This document shows positions 1,130 to 56,960 of a DNA stretch of 64,000 bases, in pieces; the first letter of the stretch is position 1, and each line of letters starts with the position of its first letter. A program made the position numbers and the translations under genes. Source of the DNA: Octopus bimaculoides. Lineage: Eukaryota. The DNA lies in the NCBI RefSeq assembly GCF_001194135.2, contig NC_068990.1, positions 37,587,417-37,651,416 on the forward strand. Direction: 5' to 3'. Under the pieces are notes generated by a model, which was not told the origin of the DNA, did not search any database, and saw only the letters and a list, made by a program, of their open reading frames with translations.

Positions 1130-1685
1130 ATACTCTGAATCACTTAAGGTGTCTAGGCAGCAAGTTGCCTATAAGGATAAATTCAGCTACCTATGCTTCT
1201 ATGTTATCAGATGTTTTAGAACCATCAATTGCTAAATTGCATCCAGGAGTGTCAAAAAAACAGTGTTATCTTTCAACAGGACAACATTCCATGTCATAGG
1301 CAAAGAATACTCATCAATGTTCGAGACACAAGGTATTGTTCCCACGGACTGTCCAGCTCAAAGTCCCAATATAAATCTAATTGAACACCTATGGGGAACT
1401 CTTGGTGAAGCTATCAGGAACACAACAATTGAAAATAAAGAACGTTTGTACCAAATGTTAAGAGAGGAATGGAGTAAAATTGCACCTAGCACCCGCAAGA
1501 AACTAGTTGATTCAATGCCTAACCGTATAAAAGCTGTATTTGATGCTAAAGGAGGGTCAGCCACATATTAAAACTAATCTATATTGCGACATATACCATA
1601 ATCTACCATGTGCACAAGTTTCATTAACATTGAAATAGCAGAACCCCAAAATATTGGGGTGGCCTAATACTTTTGGCCAAGGCTG
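1130..1685 (+). mobile_element. Tc1-family (DD34E-type) DNA transposon, 3' remnant with frameshifted transposase and right TIR
   Basis: Translation gives ...VIFQQDNIPCH (frameshift) ...CPAQSPNINLIEHLWGTL...LREEWSKI...LVDSMPNRIKAVFDAKGG, matching the Tc1 FQQDNAPCH / SPDLNPIENLW / SMP.R..AVI.AKGG motifs. It ends in GGGGTGGCCTAATACTTTTGGCCAAGGCTG followed by TA (1686-1687). No left end was seen. Confidence 0.88.
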
Positions 1686-2986: not shown

Positions 2987-3245
2987 AGTTCCAGTTCAAA
3001 GCAGTTCTAATCCAAAGCAGTGGATTGGTAGAAACATCAGAGCATTGGACAAGATGCATTGCAAGTTCAAATCCCATTCTGTCATTAAAAAAATGATGAT
3101 ACAGCTGTCAAGAGTTGTGGCTGACAGATAATATTAGCAATTTCAAAAATCAATGTATATTTTTGGGGTTTCAGATGGATAATTTTACTGCTGCACATTT
3201 TGTGTTATTTTACTGTGCTGATTGGGTAGAGTATGTGCTGTGCAT

Positions 3246-3518
3246 GAAGGCATGTGGCCTAATGGTTAGGCTGCTACATTCACAATCATTAGATCATGGG
3301 TTCAGTTCCCTGACAGGGCAGCATATTGTGTTCTTGAGAAAAACACTTCATTTCACATTGCTCCAATCCCTCTTTCGATCAGGGTGGAATGTTGGCCTGC
3401 TCTCCAAGCCAGCGGGGTGGTGTTATTTGAAGGCTAAAACAATGCAAAAATGCACTGTGACCAGCAATATGTAACAGCATTTGATAGTCTGGTTGGTCAC
3501 ATGATCACGTCATGTGAT
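3246..3518 (+). mobile_element. tRNA-derived SINE, family B (tail type 1, ending in ggtcacgtgat-like repeats)
   Basis: A-box-like tggcctaatgg, B-box-like gggttcagttcc, a central ttgtgttcttgagaaaaacacttcatttcacattgctcc block, and a tail shared with 18750-19018 and 4368-4615. Confidence 0.8.
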
Positions 3519-4367: not shown

Positions 4368-4615
4368 TGGTCACATGATGACATGATCACATGATCACAG
4401 ACAATCAGATGTTGCTACACATTGTTGGTTACAATGCGCTTTGCACCATTTTAGCCTTCAAACAATGTTACTCCACTGGCTAGGAAAACAGACTAACATT
4501 CTCCCTTGATTGAAAGGGGACTGGAGCAAAAACGAAGTGCCTTGCTCAAGAACACAATGTCCTACTTGGTCAGATCTACCACTTGTAAGTGTAACTTTCA
4601 AACTATTAGGCAAAA
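4368..4615 (-). mobile_element. SINE family B (tail type 1), reverse orientation, degenerate
   Basis: Reverse complement of the 3246-3518 tail and core (tcacatgatcac...attttagccttcaaac...cttgctcaagaacacaatg). Confidence 0.7.
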
Positions 4616-15470: not shown

Positions 15471-18352
15471 TGTGTGTGTGTATACATACATACATACACA
15501 CATATACATATATATATATGCACCCACATATATATGCATATATGTATGATCACACACGTGTGTGTGTGTGTGTGTGTGTGAATATGTGTTCAGTTGCCAA
15601 CACCTGCTGTATTTACAAGTTTTCATGTTATTAGTGCATAAATTCACCACAACGATTATCGTTGTCAATATATCGTATCTTTTTATCATGTTTTTGTGAT
15701 GTTATTGTAATTTTTTTTTTTTTTTTGTAAAACAGTTTTTATGATGATATTGCTGTTCTTATTGTTGTTGTTCTTAAATTTGAACAAAATTAGAAGATAA
15801 TATAAAATTGAAAAACAAAAATTTCTTGAACAGAAATGTATACAATTTTTTTCTGAGCTATTTACTCAACATATTAATGAAATGAATTTTTTTCTTTAAT
15901 TCCAATTATTTTTCTAAGCTTTTTTTGTTCCAACCTTTTACAATTTCAGATAAATGATTCCTGGTCGAAATTCTGAAGAATTTCCCAATGAAAATGCCAA
16001 ATTTAAGAATAAAAAAAATAATCTAAATATCTTTATTGATATATCTTGTGAATTAAATCATCTTTAACTATGAAAATCTTCAGATATATATACGTATGTG
16101 AATACATTTTTTTAAATCCTTTCATTTATATTTGCAGACGTATACAACTCTATATAAGTATTTGTGAATGAATCGACACATATACACATACATTCACATA
16201 CACTCATTCGCATACATTCATTCGCATACATTCACACCCTTGGCACCTGCATATGCACAGTTTCCTGTATGGACGTTTGTAGACATACAATCAATTACAT
16301 TCTAACATACACAAATACTCACAAATATACACATTCTCACTCTTATGTATGCTCTGTGATATAGATTTATATTTATAGCAAAACACTCACACACATACAC
16401 ATCAAGAAACTGTTTCTGTTTTCTTGCACCTTTCTTCAACTTTCAAATTATTTAATAAATGTTGGAATATATATCTATATATATTTTTAAAATCTTTTGA
16501 GTCACTTTCCAAATTATAAATATATTTCTTAAAATAAAGCAATTAGTTTGTTTTTCTTAAATTGAAGATTACATCTGTACTGTTGTTGCTGCTGCTACTG
16601 CTACTAGTGACAGATCAATTTCTTGTGGTATTTGGTTACATATATTTGTGTTCTAAGTTCGAATATTGCCAATGGCTTCACTATTCCAGTCTTGAGGAAA
16701 TAAGTGCCAGTTAAATACATGGGTAGAGTCAATTGGCTGTGTCCTTTCATAAATTATTTCCTTTGAGTTTACAGGAAAAAAATCAAAGAAATCAAAATTA
16801 TATTCATTTTGATAGAGCATCATTTTTTTTGTACGAAGTATGGAAATTTGAGGGAAAAGGAGAAACAACAAAAAATAGAGTACCTCATATTCAATGAAAC
16901 TGAAGTAAAATGACAAATGATTCCCCAACTCACTTTCACTGAAAAAGGTTAGCACAGTTTCATTAACATTCATATTGCCAACATTGACAACTGTGCCAAT
17001 CTTACCATCATTAGCAACATCAAAAATAGCCATACTGAAGATGGTGGAAATTGATGACAAGAATTATTAGCCACAAACTTTGTGTCTTCATCGGATGGTG
17101 TCTTCATCAGATGGTGCCTTCAGAGCCATTATAGGTAATAGCAGCCACAGAAGCAGGAGTAGTAATATCAGTTGTGACACCAAATATACAAGCAATGATA
17201 ACATGTCAAGCAACACCGCTTCAAATTATGCCAACACCAACTAGTATAGAAAGAAATACAAGCCACTTGGGGTCCGTCTTCTGCTAACTGGTGAATAATA
17301 AGAATATACAAACACCTGCTGATAACAAAAGTAGCGCAAAAACAGCAAGAGTTGCTCTTAGAACAAGGGAAACAGCATTATCTCCATCAGCAATGACAAT
17401 AACAGTAACTATAGTAATGACGCCAACCACAGTAACAACAGTGTCATTATTGGTCAACTTCACCTTTCATTTTTTGGGGGCCAATCGATCAGATTGGCAC
17501 CCTATCCCAAATTTCAGGCCTTGTGCCTAGAAAGGATTATTGGTTAAAGTGATATTGAATTAACAATCCCTACTTCCCCACTTGAATTCATACAAACAAC
17601 TCTATTCCCAAAGCACTAACCATTCAGGCCCAAATGATATTAATAGAGATATTGTCCTTCTTCGTCTGTTTTTTACTTTGCATTCCTTCTGATGTTTCTT
17701 CAGATGAAGAACACAAGAAAGGACTATGGTGGCAGCAAAGAAGAAGGATGTAAAAACCTGAGTCAGTTGCACAATACTGATGGTTAGAAAGTTTGGGAAG
17801 ACATCTAAGAATCTGTCGACCACCCAACTAGCACCACTAGCGACAGTAACAAGCAGTAAACAAACCAACAAAACAAAATCAAGAATAGGGTAACCCATAA
17901 ACACAAGAACCACTGCATCAAAATAAACAACAGAACAATAATAACAACAATACCAACATTAACTAAGCATACATCAGTGACTTTCCATCGTCATCTTCAT
18001 AGTTGTATTCAGAAACCAATAGATTCTTTGAGTACATAATGCAACAACTGTGTATAAACAAAAGAGGAAGGCACCAGAAGAGTAATAGATTATAACAATA
18101 ATTTCTAACATTATTTACATTATTTACAATTGATAGATACTTGTCCTCATCTTGTTTGTTGTTAACATAAGGTTTCAGCTGATATACCTTCCAGCCTTAA
18201 TCAGGTGTCTTGGGGAAATATCGAACCTGGGTTCTCATTCCTAATATATTTTTCGATGTTATTATTATTATTATTCAGGTCACTGCCTGGAATCGAACTT
18301 GGAATCTTGGGGTTAGTAGCCTGTGCTCTTAACCACTAAGGATTACGTCCGT

Positions 18353-18423
18353 GGGCATATGACGTAGTGGTTAAGAGCGCAGGCTACTAACCCCATGATT
18401 CCGAGTTCGATTCCAGGCAGTGA

Positions 18424-18425
<2 letters not shown>
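18353..18425 (+). other. tRNA-like Pol III head of the palindromic element (mirror copy on the minus strand at 18278-18350)
   Basis: A-box TGACGTAGTGG (18360-18370), B-box GAGTTCGATTC (18403-18413) and a 7-nt anticodon-like loop CTACTAA. The acceptor stem is poor, so this is not a functional tRNA. Confidence 0.8.
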
Positions 18426-18462
<37 letters not shown>

Positions 18463-18511
18463 CATCGAAAAATACCTTAGGAATGTGAACCAAGGTTCAA
18501 AATTTCCCCAA

Positions 18512-18557
18512 GACCCCTGATGAAGGATGGAGGGTATATCAGCCTAAATGTTGTGTT
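18512..18557 (+). ncRNA. Minimal type I hammerhead ribozyme motif, degenerate (mirror copy on the minus strand at 18164-18209)
   Basis: gaccc-CTGATGA-a-ggatg-loop-cagcc-TAAAT-GTT-gtgtt. G12 and 15.2 are mutated relative to the family consensus gacac-CTGATGA-a-ggctg..cagcc-GAAAC-GTT-gtgtt. Confidence 0.6.
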
Positions 18558-18749
18558 AACAACAAACAAGATGAGGACAAATATCCGTCAATTGTAAATA
18601 ATGTAAATAATGTACATAATTCCTCATCTCTTAAATATAGAACAATAATTTCTAAGGTTGGCACAAGGCCACAAATTTGTTGGGGAGCTATGTAAGTGAT
18701 GAAATCAACTCCTAGTTTATAACTTGTCTATATGTATATGTGCATGTGT

Positions 18750-19018
18750 GAAGACGCATGGCCTAATGGTTAGGCTGTAGCACTCACAATCACTAGTTTG
18801 TGGGTTCAATTACTAGGCCAGGTGGCACATTGGGTTTTTTGAGTAAAATATTTCATATCACATTGCTCCAGGTCCCCTTTCAATCAGGGCAGAATGTTGG
18901 CACGCTCACCTAGCCATCAAGGTGTCATCATTCAAAAGCTAAAACGATGCAAAGCACACTGTGACCAGCGATGTGTAACAACGTCTGATAGCCTGGTCGG
19001 TCACGTGATCACATGATA
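18750..19018 (+). mobile_element. tRNA-derived SINE, family B (tail type 1)
   Basis: Colinear with 3246-3518 across head, core and ggtcacgtgatcacatgat tail. Confidence 0.82.
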
Positions 19019-50382: not shown

Positions 50383-50861
50383 TCGAGGAATTGCTGAAAA
50401 GTTCCTGGCTTTAAGGTATCGTGATAGGCCTGGTTGGAGGCCCAACCAGAATTCTTTTATAGAAACTGAAGAACCACTCTACAAACTGAAGAATGACTGC
50501 AATAAGTGAGAGGGGAATATGTTGAATAAAGTCATAATTTACATTATTTACATTATTTACATTTGACGGATATTTGTCCTCAACTTGTTTGTTGTTAACA
50601 CAACCTTTTGGCTGATATACCCTTCAGCCTTTATCAGGTGTCTTGGGAAATTTCGAACCTGGGTTCCAGCTAGAGCTGGACTTCTGATGAAACACTGTGT
50701 TAACAACAAGCAAGATGAGGACAAATATCCATCAAATGTAAATAATGTAAATAATGTACATAGTTCCTCATCTCTTAAATATAGAACTGTAAAGTCATAA
50801 TTAATTGGATCCTCCTGTATTCTCTTTAGCCCAAAGCCAGGAACTTTTCAGTACCCCATTG
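50383..50861. mobile_element. mariner-type MITE interrupted by palindromic element copy 2
   Basis: TA|..GAGGAATTGCTGAAAAGTTCCTGGCTTT ... AAAGCCAGGAACTTTTCAGTACCCCATTG|TA. The internal GAGAGGGGAATATGTTGAATAA reads RGEYVE*, like a mariner C-terminus. Confidence 0.8.
50540..50787 (+). mobile_element. Palindromic hammerhead retroelement, copy 2 (short, no tRNA head)
   Basis: Same arms as copy 1. The 13-bp direct repeat TAAAGTCATAATT lies at 50527-50539 and 50790-50802. The right arm ends CCTCATCTCTTAAATATAGAAC, and the left arm is about 29 nt shorter. Confidence 0.88.
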
Positions 50862-51532: not shown

Positions 51533-52262
51533 TTTGGGGCTCAGAGTTTGACATGTGCGTGTTATGATAACTTCATCCCAATCAGTCAGAATCAAGCATC
51601 AACTTCTCTTAGTTAATGGATCCAACTGATAAACTCATCTTTCACACACTCTTTACTTCTGATGTCATTCATCTGCCAGATACTGAACTAAATCTATTTT
51701 CTACCAATCCTTCTGGTGCCCACCAAAAACACCATTTTGTGTGTGTTCATTTTGTATTCCATTTGATGGATATTTGTCCTCATCCTCTGGTGCCCACCAA
51801 AAACACCAGTTTTTTTTTTCTCTCTCCACAAGTGTTTCTTGGAGACATTGATCTGAAGATGTTCAGTCTAAATATTAACTATATCAATCAGTCCAGTGGG
51901 GAACACAGAAATCAAGGGTAATCACCCCACCTCAAATTCTAGCAAATTAATTTAAACATTAAGCCACATTATTGTAATTCTCACCTTATTAAAATTAAAC
52001 AGTTGCTATATATATGCATACATACACACATGCAGATACACACATGTATACTCAGATATACACATGCATATGTACAAGGTTCCAAGACTTAAGCCAACAA
52101 AATGACCATCTGAGGGATTGGAAAACATTCATACTACAACATGCAACGGTGATAACAGCGCTTGTTCGTTGTTGTTGTTTTTTGGGGTGGGGTGGGGGTG
52201 GCAGCAGTGGTGATAGTAGCAGCAGTGGTGGTGGTGGTGGCAGTGGAGGTGGCAGCAGTGGT

Positions 52263-53930: not shown

Positions 53931-55684
53931 AAATTGAATTCATTTTCATTAAAATTAATGACTTTTGCTCTTCATTAATTCAAGTGTAATTGTAATTAAT
54001 TAAGCATTTTTGATTGGCTAAGTTCAAGTATGTTAGCTTCCACTTAATAATAAATGGTCAAGTTCTTTGAAGAATCTCAGAAAGTCTTAGCATCAATTTA
54101 TTATAAAACTAGTTATTCTTTTTGGTGTTATATAGCTTCATGCTAACTATAATGAAGCAGAACTGTGCTCAAAGGGGTTCCAACCGTATCTAGTCATCTA
54201 TTTTAGGGATATCTTGGAATATATAATCCAGAGTGTATTCTTTTCCTCAATTTTTCATGACATTTGCATGAGTTTCAAAGAAATTTGGTTGCTATTTCTA
54301 GCAGTTTGATCACTATGAAGGCTCCCTCATTAGCTCATTCTTGTGATTTGTTTTGAGAGATTAATAATAAGATAATCCTTGAAGTTTTAACTAGAAGAGT
54401 TTAACATAAAAGTTAATTCTATAAAAACAATATGTCAGGGGGAAAAGAAAATGGAACAGTAAAGGGTGGTAGAATGATTAGGTGTTTGTGTCTAGACAGT
54501 TATATATAAAGATAGATAAACAGATGAGAGTGTGAATGTGTCTAAACAAATATGCATGTGTATATGTGTACGTATATGTCTGTTTGCATCTATCTCTCTT
54601 CCTTTCCATTTCTCTCTCTGCATATATAGATATATATTTGTTTGTGTGTATGTGTATGCATTATGTGTATGTGTGTGTGCATTATGTCTATGTGCTGATG
54701 GATAGATAAGCAAGGAGGTAGGAATGGAGGAGATGGATATTTTGTTGCTTACTGTTCTTTATTATAAAAGTAATTTCAATTATTTGTGAACGTGTTTGTC
54801 TCGTAATTTGCTAATTGGATTATGAATTGTGACTTTTGGATAGAATTTTCGAGATTTTCATTTAATTGGGCAAATTTTTCAGACAATTTTTTCACAGAAA
54901 TAAGCAAATTAAAGTTGTCAGTGATCAGTCATATTTTGGAGATGACCCAGTGGTTTTGCTTTCTTTTCCACTAAGTTGCAAGCCTGTTATATTTTTATTG
55001 GCAAATATAAGTAAATATTGGAGTCATACTATCTATTTTCTTAATTGATAGGTCTAGAGAAAGGGGCAATGCCCATATAACCACTGCAGGTCTTTTTAGA
55101 CTAGTGAGAAGGATACCAATCTCATCTATAATTGCAAAACAATATCGGAACAAAAGACATAAGCAAAGAGGGAATTTCAGAGAGCTGATATTCTGAACAG
55201 TCAATTGATCAAAGTGCTTTGAGTTGAAAAAAGGTCGAAACTGCTTCTTTAATTTTATTTTTTATTCATAATTTTACTCAGTCAAAAGAAGAAAAGCACA
55301 ATTCCAAGAATTCTGTACAGAAGCTTCAAGACAATTGGGAAGAAAGAAATTATCCTTTCACTGGAGACCTGATCTGAATGTTTGCAAGAGCACAGGCTCT
55401 GTTAAAAGCACTTAATATCCAGTTTTGTTGCTAACCCAGGTAACAGTTTAACACCAAAGAAAAAGAATGGTCTCACCAACATTTCCCAAATTTCACTTAC
55501 AGGATTTTGGTCAACACAATGTTTTCATGAATTTAAGGCTTTGGTCAACCCAAGGCCACGGCAGATGAAAGTTGTCCAGTTTATCAGGCAATAGGTTTGA
55601 GCCTGAATCCACAAAGTTGCAGGATGAACATTTTACCACACATCCATGCCTACATCATAGAAAAGTCTGAGAAACTATAATACA

Positions 55685-55864
55685 GTTCTATATTGAAGAG
55701 ATGAGGAATTATGTACATTATTTACATTATTTACATTTTGATGGATATTTGTCCTCATCTTGTTTGTTGTTAACACAACATTTCGGCTGATATACCCTCC
55801 AACCTTCATCAGGTGTCTTGGGGAAATTTCAAACCTGGATTCTCATTTCTAAGGTATTTTTCGA

Positions 55865-55919
<55 letters not shown>

Positions 55920-55934
55920 ATTATTATTATTCCC

Positions 55935-55969
<35 letters not shown>

Positions 55970-56127
55970 GTAACAATGAATATAATAACATCGCAAAATA
56001 CGGAGTGAGAACCCAGGTTCGAAATTTCCCCCAAGACACCTGTTGAAGGCTGGAGGATATATCAGCCGAAATGTTGTGTTAACAACAAACAAGATAAGGA
56101 CACATATTTGTCAAATGTAAATAATGT
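55685..56127 (-). mobile_element. Palindromic hammerhead retroelement, copy 3 (reverse orientation, tRNA head absent)
   Basis: The 13-bp TSD AAACTATAATACA lies at 55672-55684 and 56128-56140. The full-length arm is on the left (GTTCTATATTGAAGAGATGAGG...), the centre TTATTC-CC-GAATAA is at about 55926-55939, and the right arm is about 39 nt shorter. Confidence 0.9.
55772..55817 (-). ncRNA. Minimal type I hammerhead ribozyme motif, best-preserved copy (second copy with A6>U on the plus strand at 56035-56080)
   Basis: Minus strand: gacac-CTGATGA-a-ggttg-gagggtatat-cagcc-GAAAT-GTT-gtgtt. CUGAUGA and GAAA are intact, stem I is 5 bp, stem II is 5 bp, and stem III AATGTT probably derives from palindromic AACGTT by CpG decay. 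Confidence 0.75.
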
Positions 56128-56960
56128 AAACTATAATACATATTCCAATTTTAAAATTTTATGCCATTTATATCAATAAAATTTCATTGCCTATCCTTGC
56201 TATTAATTTTATTGTGGAAAAGACTAGTCCTCTCATGAGGACTAAAGGTTTTTATCTCCTTATATTATTCAGTTCTGAGATAAGATTTTTGCTATTCTAG
56301 ATGGGTAATTGTGATATGATTTACAGAATCCACATCTTGCTCATAAATTCCATTTTTAGATATATGATTTCTAGGGCTAGACACTCTTGCTATCACTTAA
56401 AAATAGACAGAGTGTACCCAATACACTGTACCATGTCAACAGTACTAGACATGTTGTCCCATGTGGGGGAAAATTACAAATTCATTCTACGCTTCTTAGT
56501 ACTTGTTTAAAGTAACTTCCCCCAACCAAATGCAGGAAGACCAGGATATGACTTGCATATTCCATGTTTTGCTCATACATTCCACATATACAAACAAACA
56601 CACACACATATTAAGATGGGTTCTGGGTAAATAATTATTTCAGTTTTTTTTTCTACCTTCTGTTCCATCACAGATTCTCACGTGTTTATAACATCACTGA
56701 GTTGGTGATTAATTATAATTTATATCCAATTATTTTGTAGTCACATGACATAATGGAATCATATTTCATTTCACATTCCCAGACCCCCTACATTTTAGAT
56801 TCCAATTATACTCTGGCTATTTCCTGTTATATTCTCTATTTACAATTTTACACACACATACATATATATATATATATACAGCCTTTCATATATACACACA
56901 AACAGTGAGTGGAAAAAGCACAACATAAATACAGTCAGATAAATAAGAATTATAAATATA

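What the first reader, a model, noticed from the sequence alone, without database searches (positions are those of the whole stretch)
18094..18655. Fold-back tRNA-headed retroposon with a Penelope-type hammerhead tail: a candidate PLE-mobilised SINE
Seen: a ~535-bp near-perfect palindrome flanked by a 15-bp TSD. Each half reads tRNA-like head (A and B boxes), (AAT)n, a ~180-bp tail with a hammerhead motif, and a fixed end ...CTTAAATATAGAAC. The symmetry centre sits exactly at the 5' end of the tRNA head. Two more copies with their own TSDs occur at 50.5 and 55.7 kb. Established: tRNA SINEs normally borrow the 3' end of a LINE partner; Penelope-like elements carry minimal hammerheads in their pLTRs and often insert with an inverted, truncated 5' pLTR; long variable TSDs indicate target-primed reverse transcription rather than cut-and-paste. 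Inference: one half-unit is a Pol III SINE whose tail is a PLE pLTR, copied by a PLE RT that folds back at the end of the template and synthesises an inverted duplicate. I do not know of a characterised SINE with this architecture, but I cannot search for one.
Basis: partly seen in the sequence, partly recalled or inferred. Interest (0 to 1): 0.9.

Follow-up and report, generated by a model that had tools for sequence, protein, structure and literature searches.

The report
Octopus tRNA-headed SINE with Penelope-type tail
The palindrome is a real insertion of a short non-coding octopus retroposon, with a tRNA-like promoter head and a tail carrying a minimal hammerhead ribozyme, and its insertion scars match those of Penelope-like retroelements, so it probably borrows their enzyme although no such enzyme gene was found.

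Summary
The window holds three head-to-head inverted copies of one family (18109-18643, 50540-50789, 55685-56127), each flanked by its own 13-15 bp target-site duplication.

Only one arm of each copy carries the terminal ~30 nt ending in TATAGAAC. The inverted arm stops short of it.

The tail holds a Penelope-type minimal hammerhead. My descriptor finds one intact copy in the window and none in 300 random 64-kb sequences. Rfam's hammerhead models do not match.

The head has A and B boxes at tRNA spacing, but ARAGORN and Rfam call no tRNA.

Related copies I recovered show that head-spacer-tail and the junction at the head's 5' end are family traits. These came from Logan assemblies of one unnamed species. 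A spurious Octopus bimaculoides protein also encodes the tail.

A homologous hammerhead tail, joined to an unrelated tRNA-like head, shows the same anatomy in an unidentified eukaryote.

All of this matches published Penelope-like element (PLE) insertion anatomy. The best reading is a PLE-mobilised SINE. It is not a MITE.

Two things remain unshown: no autonomous PLE sharing the tail was found, and fold-back synthesis itself is not demonstrated.

Precedents exist (Schistosoma Sm-alpha/Sj-alpha, animal retrozymes). I rate it a new variant of a known kind.

The parts
18094..18108 (.). Left target-site duplication of copy c1 (AACAATAATTTCTAA)
   Evidence: Exact 15-bp direct repeat with 18641-18655.
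18109..18341 (-). c1 inverted arm. Tail 18109-18258, (ATT)n 18259-18275, tRNA-like head 18276-18341. It lacks the last ~30 nt of the unit and the first ~12 nt of the head.
   Evidence: Alignment of the six arms, self-alignment, nhmmer.
18342..18352 (+). 11-nt leader/junction ATTACGTCCGT directly upstream of the head
   Evidence: An ATTAC motif sits 4-6 nt upstream of GGGCAT in c1, L006 and L009.
18353..18425 (+). tRNA-like head of the sense arm. A box TGACGTAGTGG at 18360, B box AGTTCGATTCC at 18404.
   Evidence: Only A+B box hit in the window, random expectation 0.025 per 64 kb. No tRNA by ARAGORN or Rfam.
18427..18462 (+). Internal (AAT)n(AAC)2 microsatellite spacer
   Evidence: Present in both arms of c1 and of c3, and in L008, L014 and L018.
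18461..18643 (+). c1 sense-arm tail of about 183 nt, ending ...CTTAAATATAGAAC
   Evidence: nhmmer E=4e-48. Alignment.
18512..18557 (+). Decayed minimal hammerhead in c1 (G12 to U, helix I and helix II mismatches)
   Evidence: The consensus form passes the descriptor.
18613..18643 (+). One-sided terminal extension (the PLE 'tail'), absent from the inverted arm
   Evidence: The same asymmetry is seen in c2, c3, L006 and L003-L005.
18641..18655 (.). Right target-site duplication of c1
50527..50539 (.). Left TSD of c2 (TAAAGTCATAATT)
   Evidence: Exact 13-bp repeat with 50790-50802.
50540..50789 (+). Copy c2. Inverted arm 50540 to about 50666, 7-bp palindrome TCCAGCT-AG-AGCTGGA at the junction, sense arm about 50681-50789 with internal deletions and the terminal extension 50759-50789. 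No head.
50790..50802 (.). Right TSD of c2
55672..55684 (.). Left TSD of c3 (AAACTATAATACA)
   Evidence: Exact 13-bp repeat with 56128-56140.
55685..55932 (-). c3 arm carrying the terminal extension (55685-55714), tail, and (AAC)n(AAT)n
55772..55817 (-). Intact minimal hammerhead: GACAC / CUGAUGA / A / GGUUGG...UCAGCC / GAAA / UG / UU^ / GUGUU
   Evidence: Only strict descriptor hit in the window, 0 hits in 300 random 64-kb sequences. The MFE fold of the consensus form gives helices I and II. Helix II covaries.
55933..56127 (+). c3 inverted partner arm. It ends at ...AATAATGT(AA) without the extension. The centre is ATTATTC-CC-GAATAAT.
56128..56140 (.). Right TSD of c3
51757..51786 (-). 30-nt fragment of the tail
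   Evidence: nhmmer E=3e-4, blastn.

Best explanation
The three loci are retroposed copies of a ~290-nt non-coding element from an octopus genome.

**The unit (shown)**
- It reads: short leader, 73-nt tRNA-derived head with A and B boxes, (AAT)n spacer, then a ~180-nt tail.
- The tail contains a Penelope-type minimal type I hammerhead and ends in ...TATAGAAC.

**Inferred life cycle**
1. RNA polymerase III starts at or just upstream of the head and reads through the unit, which has no TTTT on its sense strand.
2. The reverse transcriptase and GIY-YIG nickase of a Penelope-like element recognise the hammerhead-bearing tail and copy the RNA at a nicked target. Copying is often incomplete at the 5' end.
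3. A second, inverted copy is laid down head to head, as is usual for PLEs.
4. Resolution leaves the last ~30 nt at one end only, and a 9-15 bp target-site duplication.

**Status of each step**
- Shown: the anatomy, the hammerhead motif, the boxes, the TSDs, the one-sided extension, the family-level head-tail link, and the homology of the tail to tandem hammerhead repeats elsewhere.
- Inferred: Pol III transcription, use of a PLE enzyme, and how the inverted arm is made.
For: **In the window**
- There are three independent insertions with perfect 15, 13 and 13 bp TSDs in unique flanks.
- Each copy is head-to-head inverted, and only one arm reaches ...TATAGAAC.
- The centres differ: head 5' end, tail, microsatellite. 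That means variable 5' truncation.

**Match to published PLE anatomy**
- An inverted 5'-truncated copy at the 5' end, a 30-40 bp 'tail' at one end only, and variable TSDs are described for PLEs.
- A 31-bp tail, an inverted pLTR 37 bp shorter, action of the PLE enzyme in trans on anything bounded by pLTRs, junction palindromes, and (AAT)n/(AAC)n template jumps are also described.

**Hammerhead**
- There are 0 hits in 300 random windows.
- Helix II is 90.6% paired, with compensatory changes at 3 of 6 pairs.
- The head and the hammerhead are on the same strand.

**Head**
- A and B boxes sit at tRNA positions 8 and 52.
- The consensus A box TGGCGTAGTGG is a perfect match.
- No arm has TTTT on its sense strand.

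**Outside the window**
- Head-spacer-tail recurs in L009, L014, L018 and L019.
- L009 and L014 are head-to-head palindromes centred at the head's 5' end, like c1.
- L006 starts with GGGCATATGGCG, like c1.
- The tail translation hits Octopus bimaculoides proteins A0A0L8FV75 and XP_052825882.1.

**A second lineage**
- In ENA assembly ERZ21867824 a homologous hammerhead tail (nhmmer E down to 1e-12) follows an unrelated tRNA-like head.
- It shows the same anatomy: the inverted arm is 35-38 nt short, and TSDs are 12, 11 and 9 bp.
- Different heads on one tail is the classic sign that the tail is the module the enzyme recognises.
Against: - No RT or GIY-YIG ORF is present in the window or in any fetched locus. 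No autonomous PLE sharing the tail was found.
- Rfam's hammerhead and tRNA models and ARAGORN give no hit, even on the isolated segments.
- Five of the six arms in the window carry inactivating core changes or lack the hammerhead.
- Within the window the head occurs in only one copy.
- No tandem (pLTR) arrangement is seen in the octopus copies.
- One related copy, L001, has the terminal extension on both arms and no visible TSD.
- The species behind the Logan runs and the ENA assembly are unknown.
Confidence: 0.72

Rival explanations
1. An ordinary LINE-mobilised tRNA SINE (partner RTE, CR1, Dong or similar). The inverted arms would come from twin priming or later rearrangement, and the hammerhead-like motif would be incidental.
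For: LINEs and tRNA SINEs dominate octopus repeats. TSDs of 9-15 bp also fit LINE target-primed reverse transcription. A LINE-like C-terminal remnant lies at 47146-47738 by my reading, and an RTE-like LINE is present in L003.
Against: - Twin priming inverts a different, upstream part of the template. It does not duplicate the same region.
- Seven of eight copies whose 5' side is visible have an inverted duplicate arm.
- The one-sided ~30-nt extension is a named PLE trait.
- There is no poly(A) or 3' microsatellite at the end.
- The motif meets all PLE minimal hammerhead criteria and covaries.
- The tail has no similarity to the LINE remnant in the window.
Confidence: 0.1
2. The copies are 5'-truncated fragments (solo inverted pLTRs) of an autonomous PLE. 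The tRNA-like head would be captured sequence or a one-off chimera, not a SINE promoter.
For: c2 and c3 have no head. PLE enzymes mobilise unrelated sequence bounded by pLTRs, and they template-jump at (AAT)n/(AAC)n. Many dispersed minimal hammerheads are thought to be truncated PLEs.
Against: - The head lies upstream of the spacer and tail in c1, L009, L014, L018 and L019, and its first 12 nt in L006.
- In three palindromic copies both arms end at the head's 5' end.
- No coding sequence lies upstream of the tail in any copy.
- A second lineage pairs the homologous tail with another tRNA-like head.
Confidence: 0.08
3. A retrozyme-style element that spreads through hammerhead-cleaved, circularised RNA copied by rolling-circle reverse transcription. 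The Pol III head would be secondary.
For: The homologous elements in ERZ21867824 are tandem ~129-nt monomers, each with a hammerhead. This resembles animal non-LTR retrozymes, which are argued to derive from PLE pLTRs.
Against: Octopus copies are never tandem in the data at hand. They have a single hammerhead per arm with no helix III, so a monomer should not cleave. They also have defined 5' and 3' ends. This rival overlaps with the best explanation, since the enzyme would be the same.
Confidence: 0.07
4. A MITE or fold-back DNA transposon moved by cut-and-paste.
For: The overall structure is palindromic, and L001 has the terminal sequence at both ends.
Against: The termini are not inverted repeats of each other in c1-c3, L006 or L003-L005. 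TSD length varies from 9 to 15 bp. The centre moves from copy to copy. Single-arm copies exist, such as L019.
Confidence: 0.03

Closest known systems
Penelope-like element insertions (pLTR with inverted pLTR and one-sided 'tail')
   Same: An inverted 5'-truncated copy abuts the 5' end. A ~30-nt extension is present at one end only. TSDs vary in length. Small palindromes sit at the junction, and (AAT)n/(AAC)n tracts are associated. The repeat carries a minimal hammerhead.
   Different: There is no RT/GIY-YIG ORF and no tandem pLTR in the octopus copies. The unit is ~290 nt and starts with a tRNA-like Pol III head.
Minimal type I hammerheads of PLEs (Cervera and de la Pena 2014)
   Same: CUGAUGA core, an unpaired nucleotide before helix II, a G10.1-C11.1 pair, a 6-bp helix II, a 5-bp helix I, GAAA followed directly by two nucleotides and UH. 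Pairs of motifs occur on opposite strands 100-700 bp apart.
   Different: Positions 15.2/16.2 are U and G in octopus, not a strict palindrome. In the ERZ21867824 relatives they are C and G. Cleavage was not tested.
Schistosoma Sm-alpha / Sj-alpha SINE-like retroposons
   Same: They are short, high-copy and non-coding. They have a tRNA-related Pol III promoter plus a hammerhead ribozyme.
   Different: Those carry a canonical, self-cleaving type I hammerhead that Rfam-type searches find, and they are often tandem. Sequence relatedness to the octopus unit was not tested. The papers I read describe no PLE-type inverted arm or one-sided extension for them.
Animal non-LTR retrozymes
   Same: They are non-autonomous, hammerhead-bearing and proposed to depend on PLEs. 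The ERZ21867824 relatives of the octopus tail are tandem ~129-nt hammerhead monomers.
   Different: Retrozymes are defined by tandem units and circular RNA. No tRNA-like head is described for them. The octopus copies are not tandem.
Classical LINE-dependent tRNA SINEs, and L1 twin-priming inversions
   Same: They have a tRNA-derived head with A and B boxes, a modular build of head, body and tail, 5' truncation, and TSDs of 10-15 bp.
   Different: The tail is not LINE-like. There is no A-rich or microsatellite 3' end. The inverted arm duplicates the same region rather than inverting an upstream one.

Membership tests
PLE-type (Penelope-like) insertion / non-autonomous PLE derivative | Inverted 5'-truncated copy directly adjacent to the 5' end of the sense copy | tested here: met
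   Met in c1, c2, c3, L001, L006, L009, L014 and L003-L005. L019 is a single arm.
PLE-type (Penelope-like) insertion / non-autonomous PLE derivative | 30-40 bp terminal extension ('tail') present at only one end of the insertion | tested here: met
   The extension is 28-31 nt in c1-c3 and 35-38 nt in L003-L005. L006 is one-sided. L001 is the exception, with the extension on both ends.
PLE-type (Penelope-like) insertion / non-autonomous PLE derivative | Target-site duplication of variable length | tested here: met
   TSDs are 15, 13 and 13 bp in the window, 10 bp in L006, and 12, 11 and 9 bp in L003-L005.
PLE-type (Penelope-like) insertion / non-autonomous PLE derivative | Minimal type I hammerhead in the repeat | tested here: met
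   Descriptor hit at 55772-55817 and on the consensus, with 0 hits in 300 random windows. Helix II covaries. Rfam models are negative.
PLE-type (Penelope-like) insertion / non-autonomous PLE derivative | Partial tandem arrangement forming pseudo-LTRs | tested here: not met
   No tandem units in the three window copies or the Logan copies. Tandem units are present only in the ERZ21867824 relatives.
PLE-type (Penelope-like) insertion / non-autonomous PLE derivative | An autonomous RT + GIY-YIG element in the same genome sharing the 3' sequence | not testable with these tools
   No such ORF in the window or fetched loci. Octopus genome DNA could not be searched. Scans of other collections gave 0 hits.
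tRNA-derived SINE | Internal Pol III promoter: A and B boxes at tRNA-like positions | tested here: met
   A box at +8 and B box at +52. This is the only such pair in 64 kb, against 0.025 expected. The consensus A box is perfect.
tRNA-derived SINE | Head recognisable as a tRNA (cloverleaf) | tested here: not met
   ARAGORN finds none, even at 80% threshold on the consensus. Rfam tRNA gives no hit at E<=10 on the isolated head.
tRNA-derived SINE | Head, body and tail recur together as one unit in many copies | tested here: met
   Seen in c1, L009, L014, L018 and L019, and partly in L006. The sample is small.
tRNA-derived SINE | No Pol III terminator (TTTT) inside the unit on the sense strand | tested here: met
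   None in any of the six arms. The antisense strand has T5. This is weak evidence, since the chance of having none is about 0.17 by my estimate.
tRNA-derived SINE | Transcription by RNA polymerase III from the head | not testable with these tools
   No expression or 5'-end data are available.
MITE / fold-back DNA transposon | Terminal inverted repeats reaching both ends, and a TSD of fixed length | tested here: not met
   The ends are asymmetric and TSDs range from 9 to 15 bp.
Canonical hammerhead ribozyme (Rfam Hammerhead_1, _3, HH9, HH10, II) | Match to a curated covariance model, including helix III | tested here: not met
   No hit at gathering score or at E<=10. The motif has no helix III.
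Animal non-LTR retrozyme | Two or more tandem units, each with a type I hammerhead | tested here: not met
   Not met for the octopus copies. Met for the homologous repeats in L003-L005.
Sm-alpha / Sj-alpha family | Sequence homology to the Schistosoma elements | not tested
   No Sm-alpha sequence was available. The resemblance is architectural only.

The most novel reading that the evidence does not exclude
There may be a widespread, so far unnamed class of SINEs in aquatic invertebrates. In it, different tRNA-derived Pol III heads have been grafted onto one conserved hammerhead-bearing tail that Penelope-like reverse transcriptases recognise. If so, these would be the first SINEs shown to be driven by PLEs rather than LINEs. 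They would be abundant in octopus genomes. They would also offer a natural ~290-nt reporter, with a Pol III-defined 5' end, for working out how PLEs build inverted repeats and one-sided tails.
Probability: 0.35. Interest if true: 0.75.

Novelty: new variant of a known kind. Interest (0 to 1): 0.6.

Why it matters
- SINEs are textbook parasites of LINEs. A SINE family that uses a Penelope-like element would add a second class of driver.
- SINEs make up a large share of octopus genomes, so this would help explain part of that repeat load.
- The PLE insertion mechanism is still unknown, including the inverted copies, the one-sided tail and the role of the hammerhead.
- Short copies with a known RNA 5' end, a defined 3' end and clean TSDs expose each junction at base resolution. 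They could guide an in vitro or cell-based PLE assay.
- Two unrelated tRNA-like heads share a homologous hammerhead tail. This points to the tail as the cis element the enzyme reads.

Tried and rejected
**Searches that found nothing**
- Rfam at gathering score over the whole window, and at E<=10 on 18050-18700, on the head alone and on the intact hammerhead arm: no hammerhead or tRNA.
- ARAGORN on the window, the loci and the head consensus: no tRNA.
- ORF listing and Pfam on the window: no RT or GIY-YIG. The hits were a weak DDE_3 match below Pfam's curated cut-off at 1236-1568 and a weak HTH_5 match at 40254-40478.
- Exact-pattern scans of metagenome, viral and prokaryote genome collections for the tail: 0 hits.
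- A protein search with the antisense ORF spanning head and tail: no candidate.
- Full-text search for five 21-28-nt strings of the unit: no paper.

**Leads that ended**
- The look-up of A0A0L8FV75 found no contig. XP_052825882.1 lies in a 132-kb gene, so no DNA was returned.
- The 694-aa ORF near the L003 array is a LINE with an AP endonuclease, not a PLE. Searching with it gave only unnamed ENA proteins, so the host of ERZ21867824 stays unknown.
- P0081 (538 aa) and P0056 (1057 aa) looked bacterial-type and unrelated to the repeat, and I did not pursue them.

**Ideas rejected**
- MITE: the ends are asymmetric and TSD length varies.
- L1-style twin priming: the arms duplicate the same region.
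- A strictly symmetric snap-back: the arms are unequal in c2, L001 and L006.
- Arms from different templates, suggested by perfect TSDs beside 12-17% divergence between arms. The numbers are too small to decide.
Full report
**1. What is in the window**

Region 18094-18655 contains a 535-bp head-to-head inverted repeat (18109-18643). It is flanked by an exact 15-bp direct repeat, AACAATAATTTCTAA. The arms are 88% complementary over 528 aligned columns.

A blastn and nhmmer search of the window with one arm finds two more copies, at 50540-50789 and 55685-56127, plus a 30-nt fragment at 51757-51786. Each copy has its own exact 13-bp target-site duplication, TAAAGTCATAATT and AAACTATAATACA. Each sits in flanks that are unique within the window.

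The window is 33% G+C, has 2456 N and is full of microsatellites. It looks like a draft animal assembly.

**2. Anatomy of the copies**

Aligning the six arms gives this unit:
- a tRNA-like head of 73 nt;
- an (AAT)n/(AAC)n spacer;
- a ~183-nt tail ending ...GTACATAATTCCTCATCTCTTAAATATAGAAC.

- Only one arm of each copy reaches that end. The inverted arm stops at ...TGTAAATAATGT(A), 28-31 nt short, in all three copies.
- Only c1 has the head. The centre of c3 lies in the microsatellite (ATTATTC-CC-GAATAAT). The centre of c2 lies inside the tail, at a 7-bp palindrome (TCCAGCT-AG-AGCTGGA), and its arms are of unequal length.

Arms carrying the extension differ from the six-arm consensus by 2.7-3.9% in c1 and c3. 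Their partner arms differ by 6.2-7.4%. Arms of one copy share almost no derived changes.

**3. The hammerhead**

Rfam finds no hammerhead at gathering score or at E<=10, even when given only the best arm. That is expected if the motif is the PLE type, which lacks helix III.

Cervera and de la Pena (PMC4209133) define that type by:
- a 4-5 bp helix I;
- CUGAUGA;
- a G10.1-C11.1 pair;
- a long helix II;
- GAAA, followed at once by two nucleotides and UH.

The family consensus reads GACAC-CUGAUGA-A-GGCUGG(AGGGUAUA)UCAGCC-GAAA-UG-UU^GUGUU, and it fits all of these. A descriptor I wrote from those rules gives these results:

| Target | Strict hits |
|---|---|
| 64-kb window | 1 (55772-55817, minus strand, the c3 arm) |
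| Family consensus | 1 |
| 300 random 64-kb sequences of matching dinucleotide make-up | 0 |

RNAfold gives helices I and II as the minimum-energy fold of the consensus motif. Four other arms carry single core mutations, and the c2 sense arm has lost most of the motif to an internal deletion, as expected for decaying copies.

On an alignment of 16 motifs from the window and related loci, helix II is 90.6% paired. It shows compensatory changes at 3 of its 6 pairs. Only the inner three pairs of helix I are conserved across lineages.

**4. The head**

ARAGORN and Rfam call no tRNA. The claim therefore rests on promoter boxes.
- TGACGTAGTGG lies at unit position 8 and AGTTCGATTCC at position 52, the canonical tRNA positions.
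- Each is one mismatch from consensus.
- This pair is the only one in the window, against 0.025 expected by chance.
- The consensus of eight heads has a perfect A box, TGGCGTAGTGG.
- No arm has TTTT on the sense strand, while the antisense strand has T5.
- Head and hammerhead lie on the same strand.

**5. Relatives outside the window**

Translating the tail and searching protein collections worked as a back door.
- The consensus peptide hits A0A0L8FV75, an uncharacterised Octopus bimaculoides protein, at 83% identity.
- A profile-free scan gave 79 cluster representatives. One is a short exon in O. bimaculoides dystrobrevin beta isoform X1.

So the family lives in Octopus, and the window probably comes from this genus.

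Fetching the DNA behind other hits gave independent copies from Logan assemblies of runs SRR11869384-94, species unknown:

| Locus | Structure |
|---|---|
| L009 | tail, head, head, tail: a palindrome centred at the head's 5' end, like c1 |
| L014 | the same arrangement |
| L018 | head, spacer, tail |
| L019 | a single arm with part of the head and the terminal extension |
| L006 | a short arm with the extension, 18 nt of filler, then a sense arm starting GGGCATATGGCG (c1 starts GGGCATATGACG) and ending without the extension; 10-bp TSD |
| L001 | unequal arms that both carry the extension; no visible TSD |

Head-spacer-tail is thus a property of the family, and so is a junction at the head's 5' end.

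**6. A second lineage**

Most of the 79 protein hits are tandem repeats of one peptide. Their DNA comes from ENA assembly ERZ21867824 (loci L003-L005), and it consists of ~129-nt tandem monomers.
- Each monomer has a minimal hammerhead, ACAC-CUGAAGA-A-GGCCGG...UCGGCC-GAAA-CG-UU^GUGG.
- The monomers are homologous to the octopus tail (nhmmer E down to 1e-12).
- Each array is preceded by an inverted arm that stops at ...TTAATGAT, 35-38 nt short of the full end ...AAATTTAGACAAC.
- The arrays are flanked by TSDs of 12, 11 and 9 bp.
- In L004 and L005 the inverted arm is full length and starts with its own tRNA-like head. Its A box is TGGCGTAACGG and its B box GGTTCAATTCT. Its sequence is unrelated to the octopus head.

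The host is an unidentified eukaryote. Two different Pol III heads on one homologous tail is the pattern seen when SINEs recruit the recognition module of their driver.

**7. Comparison with what is known**

*PLE insertions.* Published descriptions read like a parts list of these copies.
- Craig and colleagues describe high 5' truncation, an inverted 5'-truncated copy at the 5' end, a 30-40 bp 'tail' at one end only, variable TSDs, and hammerheads in the repeats.
- Arkhipova 2013 describes a 31-bp tail, an inverted pLTR 37 bp shorter, junction palindromes, action in trans on sequence bounded by pLTRs, and jumps at (AAT)n/(AAC)n.
- Cervera and de la Pena noted paired minimal hammerheads on opposite strands 100-700 bp apart in Schistosoma.

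*Non-autonomous PLE relatives.* Several are already known:
- Chlamys MRC1;
- animal retrozymes;
- a 2026 preprint that places retrozymes next to PLE pLTRs.

*A Pol III head joined to a hammerhead.* This is known from Schistosoma Sm-alpha/Sj-alpha.

*What I did not find.* I found no description of a tRNA-headed element with PLE-type insertion scars, nor any link between octopus SINEs and PLEs. Octopus repeat papers list SINEs and Penelope separately. Repbase, Dfam and SINEBase could not be consulted.

**8. Mechanism**

The most likely reading is a SINE driven by a PLE.
1. Pol III makes an RNA from the head.
2. The PLE enzyme recognises the hammerhead-bearing tail and starts target-primed reverse transcription at its 3' end.
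3. A second, inverted copy is added head to head.
4. Resolution leaves the terminal ~30 nt on one side only.

How the second arm arises is open.
- Small palindromes at the centres of c2 and c3 fit self-priming, as Arkhipova proposed.
- Unequal arms in c2, L001 and L006, and filler at the junctions, fit two separately truncated cDNAs being joined.
- In c1, L009 and L014 one arm runs to the full 5' end and the other to about head position 9-13. This supports the head's start being the RNA's start.

An ATTAC motif 4-6 nt upstream of GGGCAT in three loci may mark the true transcription start.

**9. Limits**

- No RT/GIY-YIG gene was found in the window or in about 75 kb of related loci. No tool here can search an octopus genome by DNA.
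- The PLE link is therefore by signature, not by partner.
- Pol III transcription and ribozyme activity are untested.
- The external sample is about ten loci, reached through one reading frame of the tail, so it is biased.

**10. Verdict**

- The element is best filed as a new variant of a known kind: a tRNA-headed, hammerhead-tailed SINE with Penelope-type insertion anatomy.
- Interest is moderate to high for transposon biology.

Noticed in passing
window 18737-19012; also 3232-3508 and 4384-4529 (minus): A different SINE-like repeat of about 275 bp, starting with a tRNA-like GCATGGCCTAATGGTTAGG... head, lies 80 bp downstream of c1. It has two more copies in the window at 76-77% identity.
   Followed up: partly
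window 1236-1568 (+) and 40254-40478 (-): These look like Tc1/mariner-type transposase remnants. The first gives a weak DDE_3 match below Pfam's curated cut-off. The second reads like a mariner N-terminal helix-turn-helix.
   Followed up: partly
window 47146-47738 (-): Two stop-free pieces read like the C-terminal part of a LINE (RTE/CR1-like) protein. Pfam gives no hit. The region shares nothing with the SINE tail.
   Followed up: partly
protein P0012 = XP_052825882.1, Octopus bimaculoides: A predicted 94-aa 'dystrobrevin beta isoform X1' contains 25 residues that are a 92% match to the translated hammerhead region. This is a copy of the element annotated as coding exon.
   Followed up: partly
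window c1 and c3 arms (18109-18258 vs 18463-18643; 55985-56127 vs 55685-55871): The arm without the terminal extension is about twice as far from the family consensus as its partner (20/293 vs 12/361 differences). The TSDs are perfect. Possible causes are lower-fidelity synthesis of the inverted arm, a different template, or chance.
   Followed up: partly
window 18342-18346; L006 about 854; L009 about 212: The pentamer ATTAC lies 4-6 nt upstream of the head's GGGCAT in three independent loci. It could be an inherited 5' leader marking the Pol III start site.
   Followed up: no
window consensus tail, about 18489-18505 and equivalents: A B-box-like GGTTCGAAATT, overlapping the palindrome GAAATTTC, sits about 20 nt upstream of the hammerhead in the tail. 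Its meaning is unknown.
   Followed up: no
L003 10084-10520, L004 9732-10420, L005 9422-10260 (ENA ERZ21867824): These are tandem ~129-nt hammerhead monomers with an inverted, tRNA-headed arm and 9-12 bp TSDs, in an unidentified eukaryote. They form a retrozyme-like relative that also has a Pol III-type head. The same assembly carries thousands of copies of an AP-endonuclease LINE.
   Followed up: partly
L001 716-1007 (Logan SRR11869385): A related copy has the terminal ...TATAGAAC on both arms, unequal arm lengths (about 106 and 185 nt), and no recognisable TSD.
   Followed up: partly
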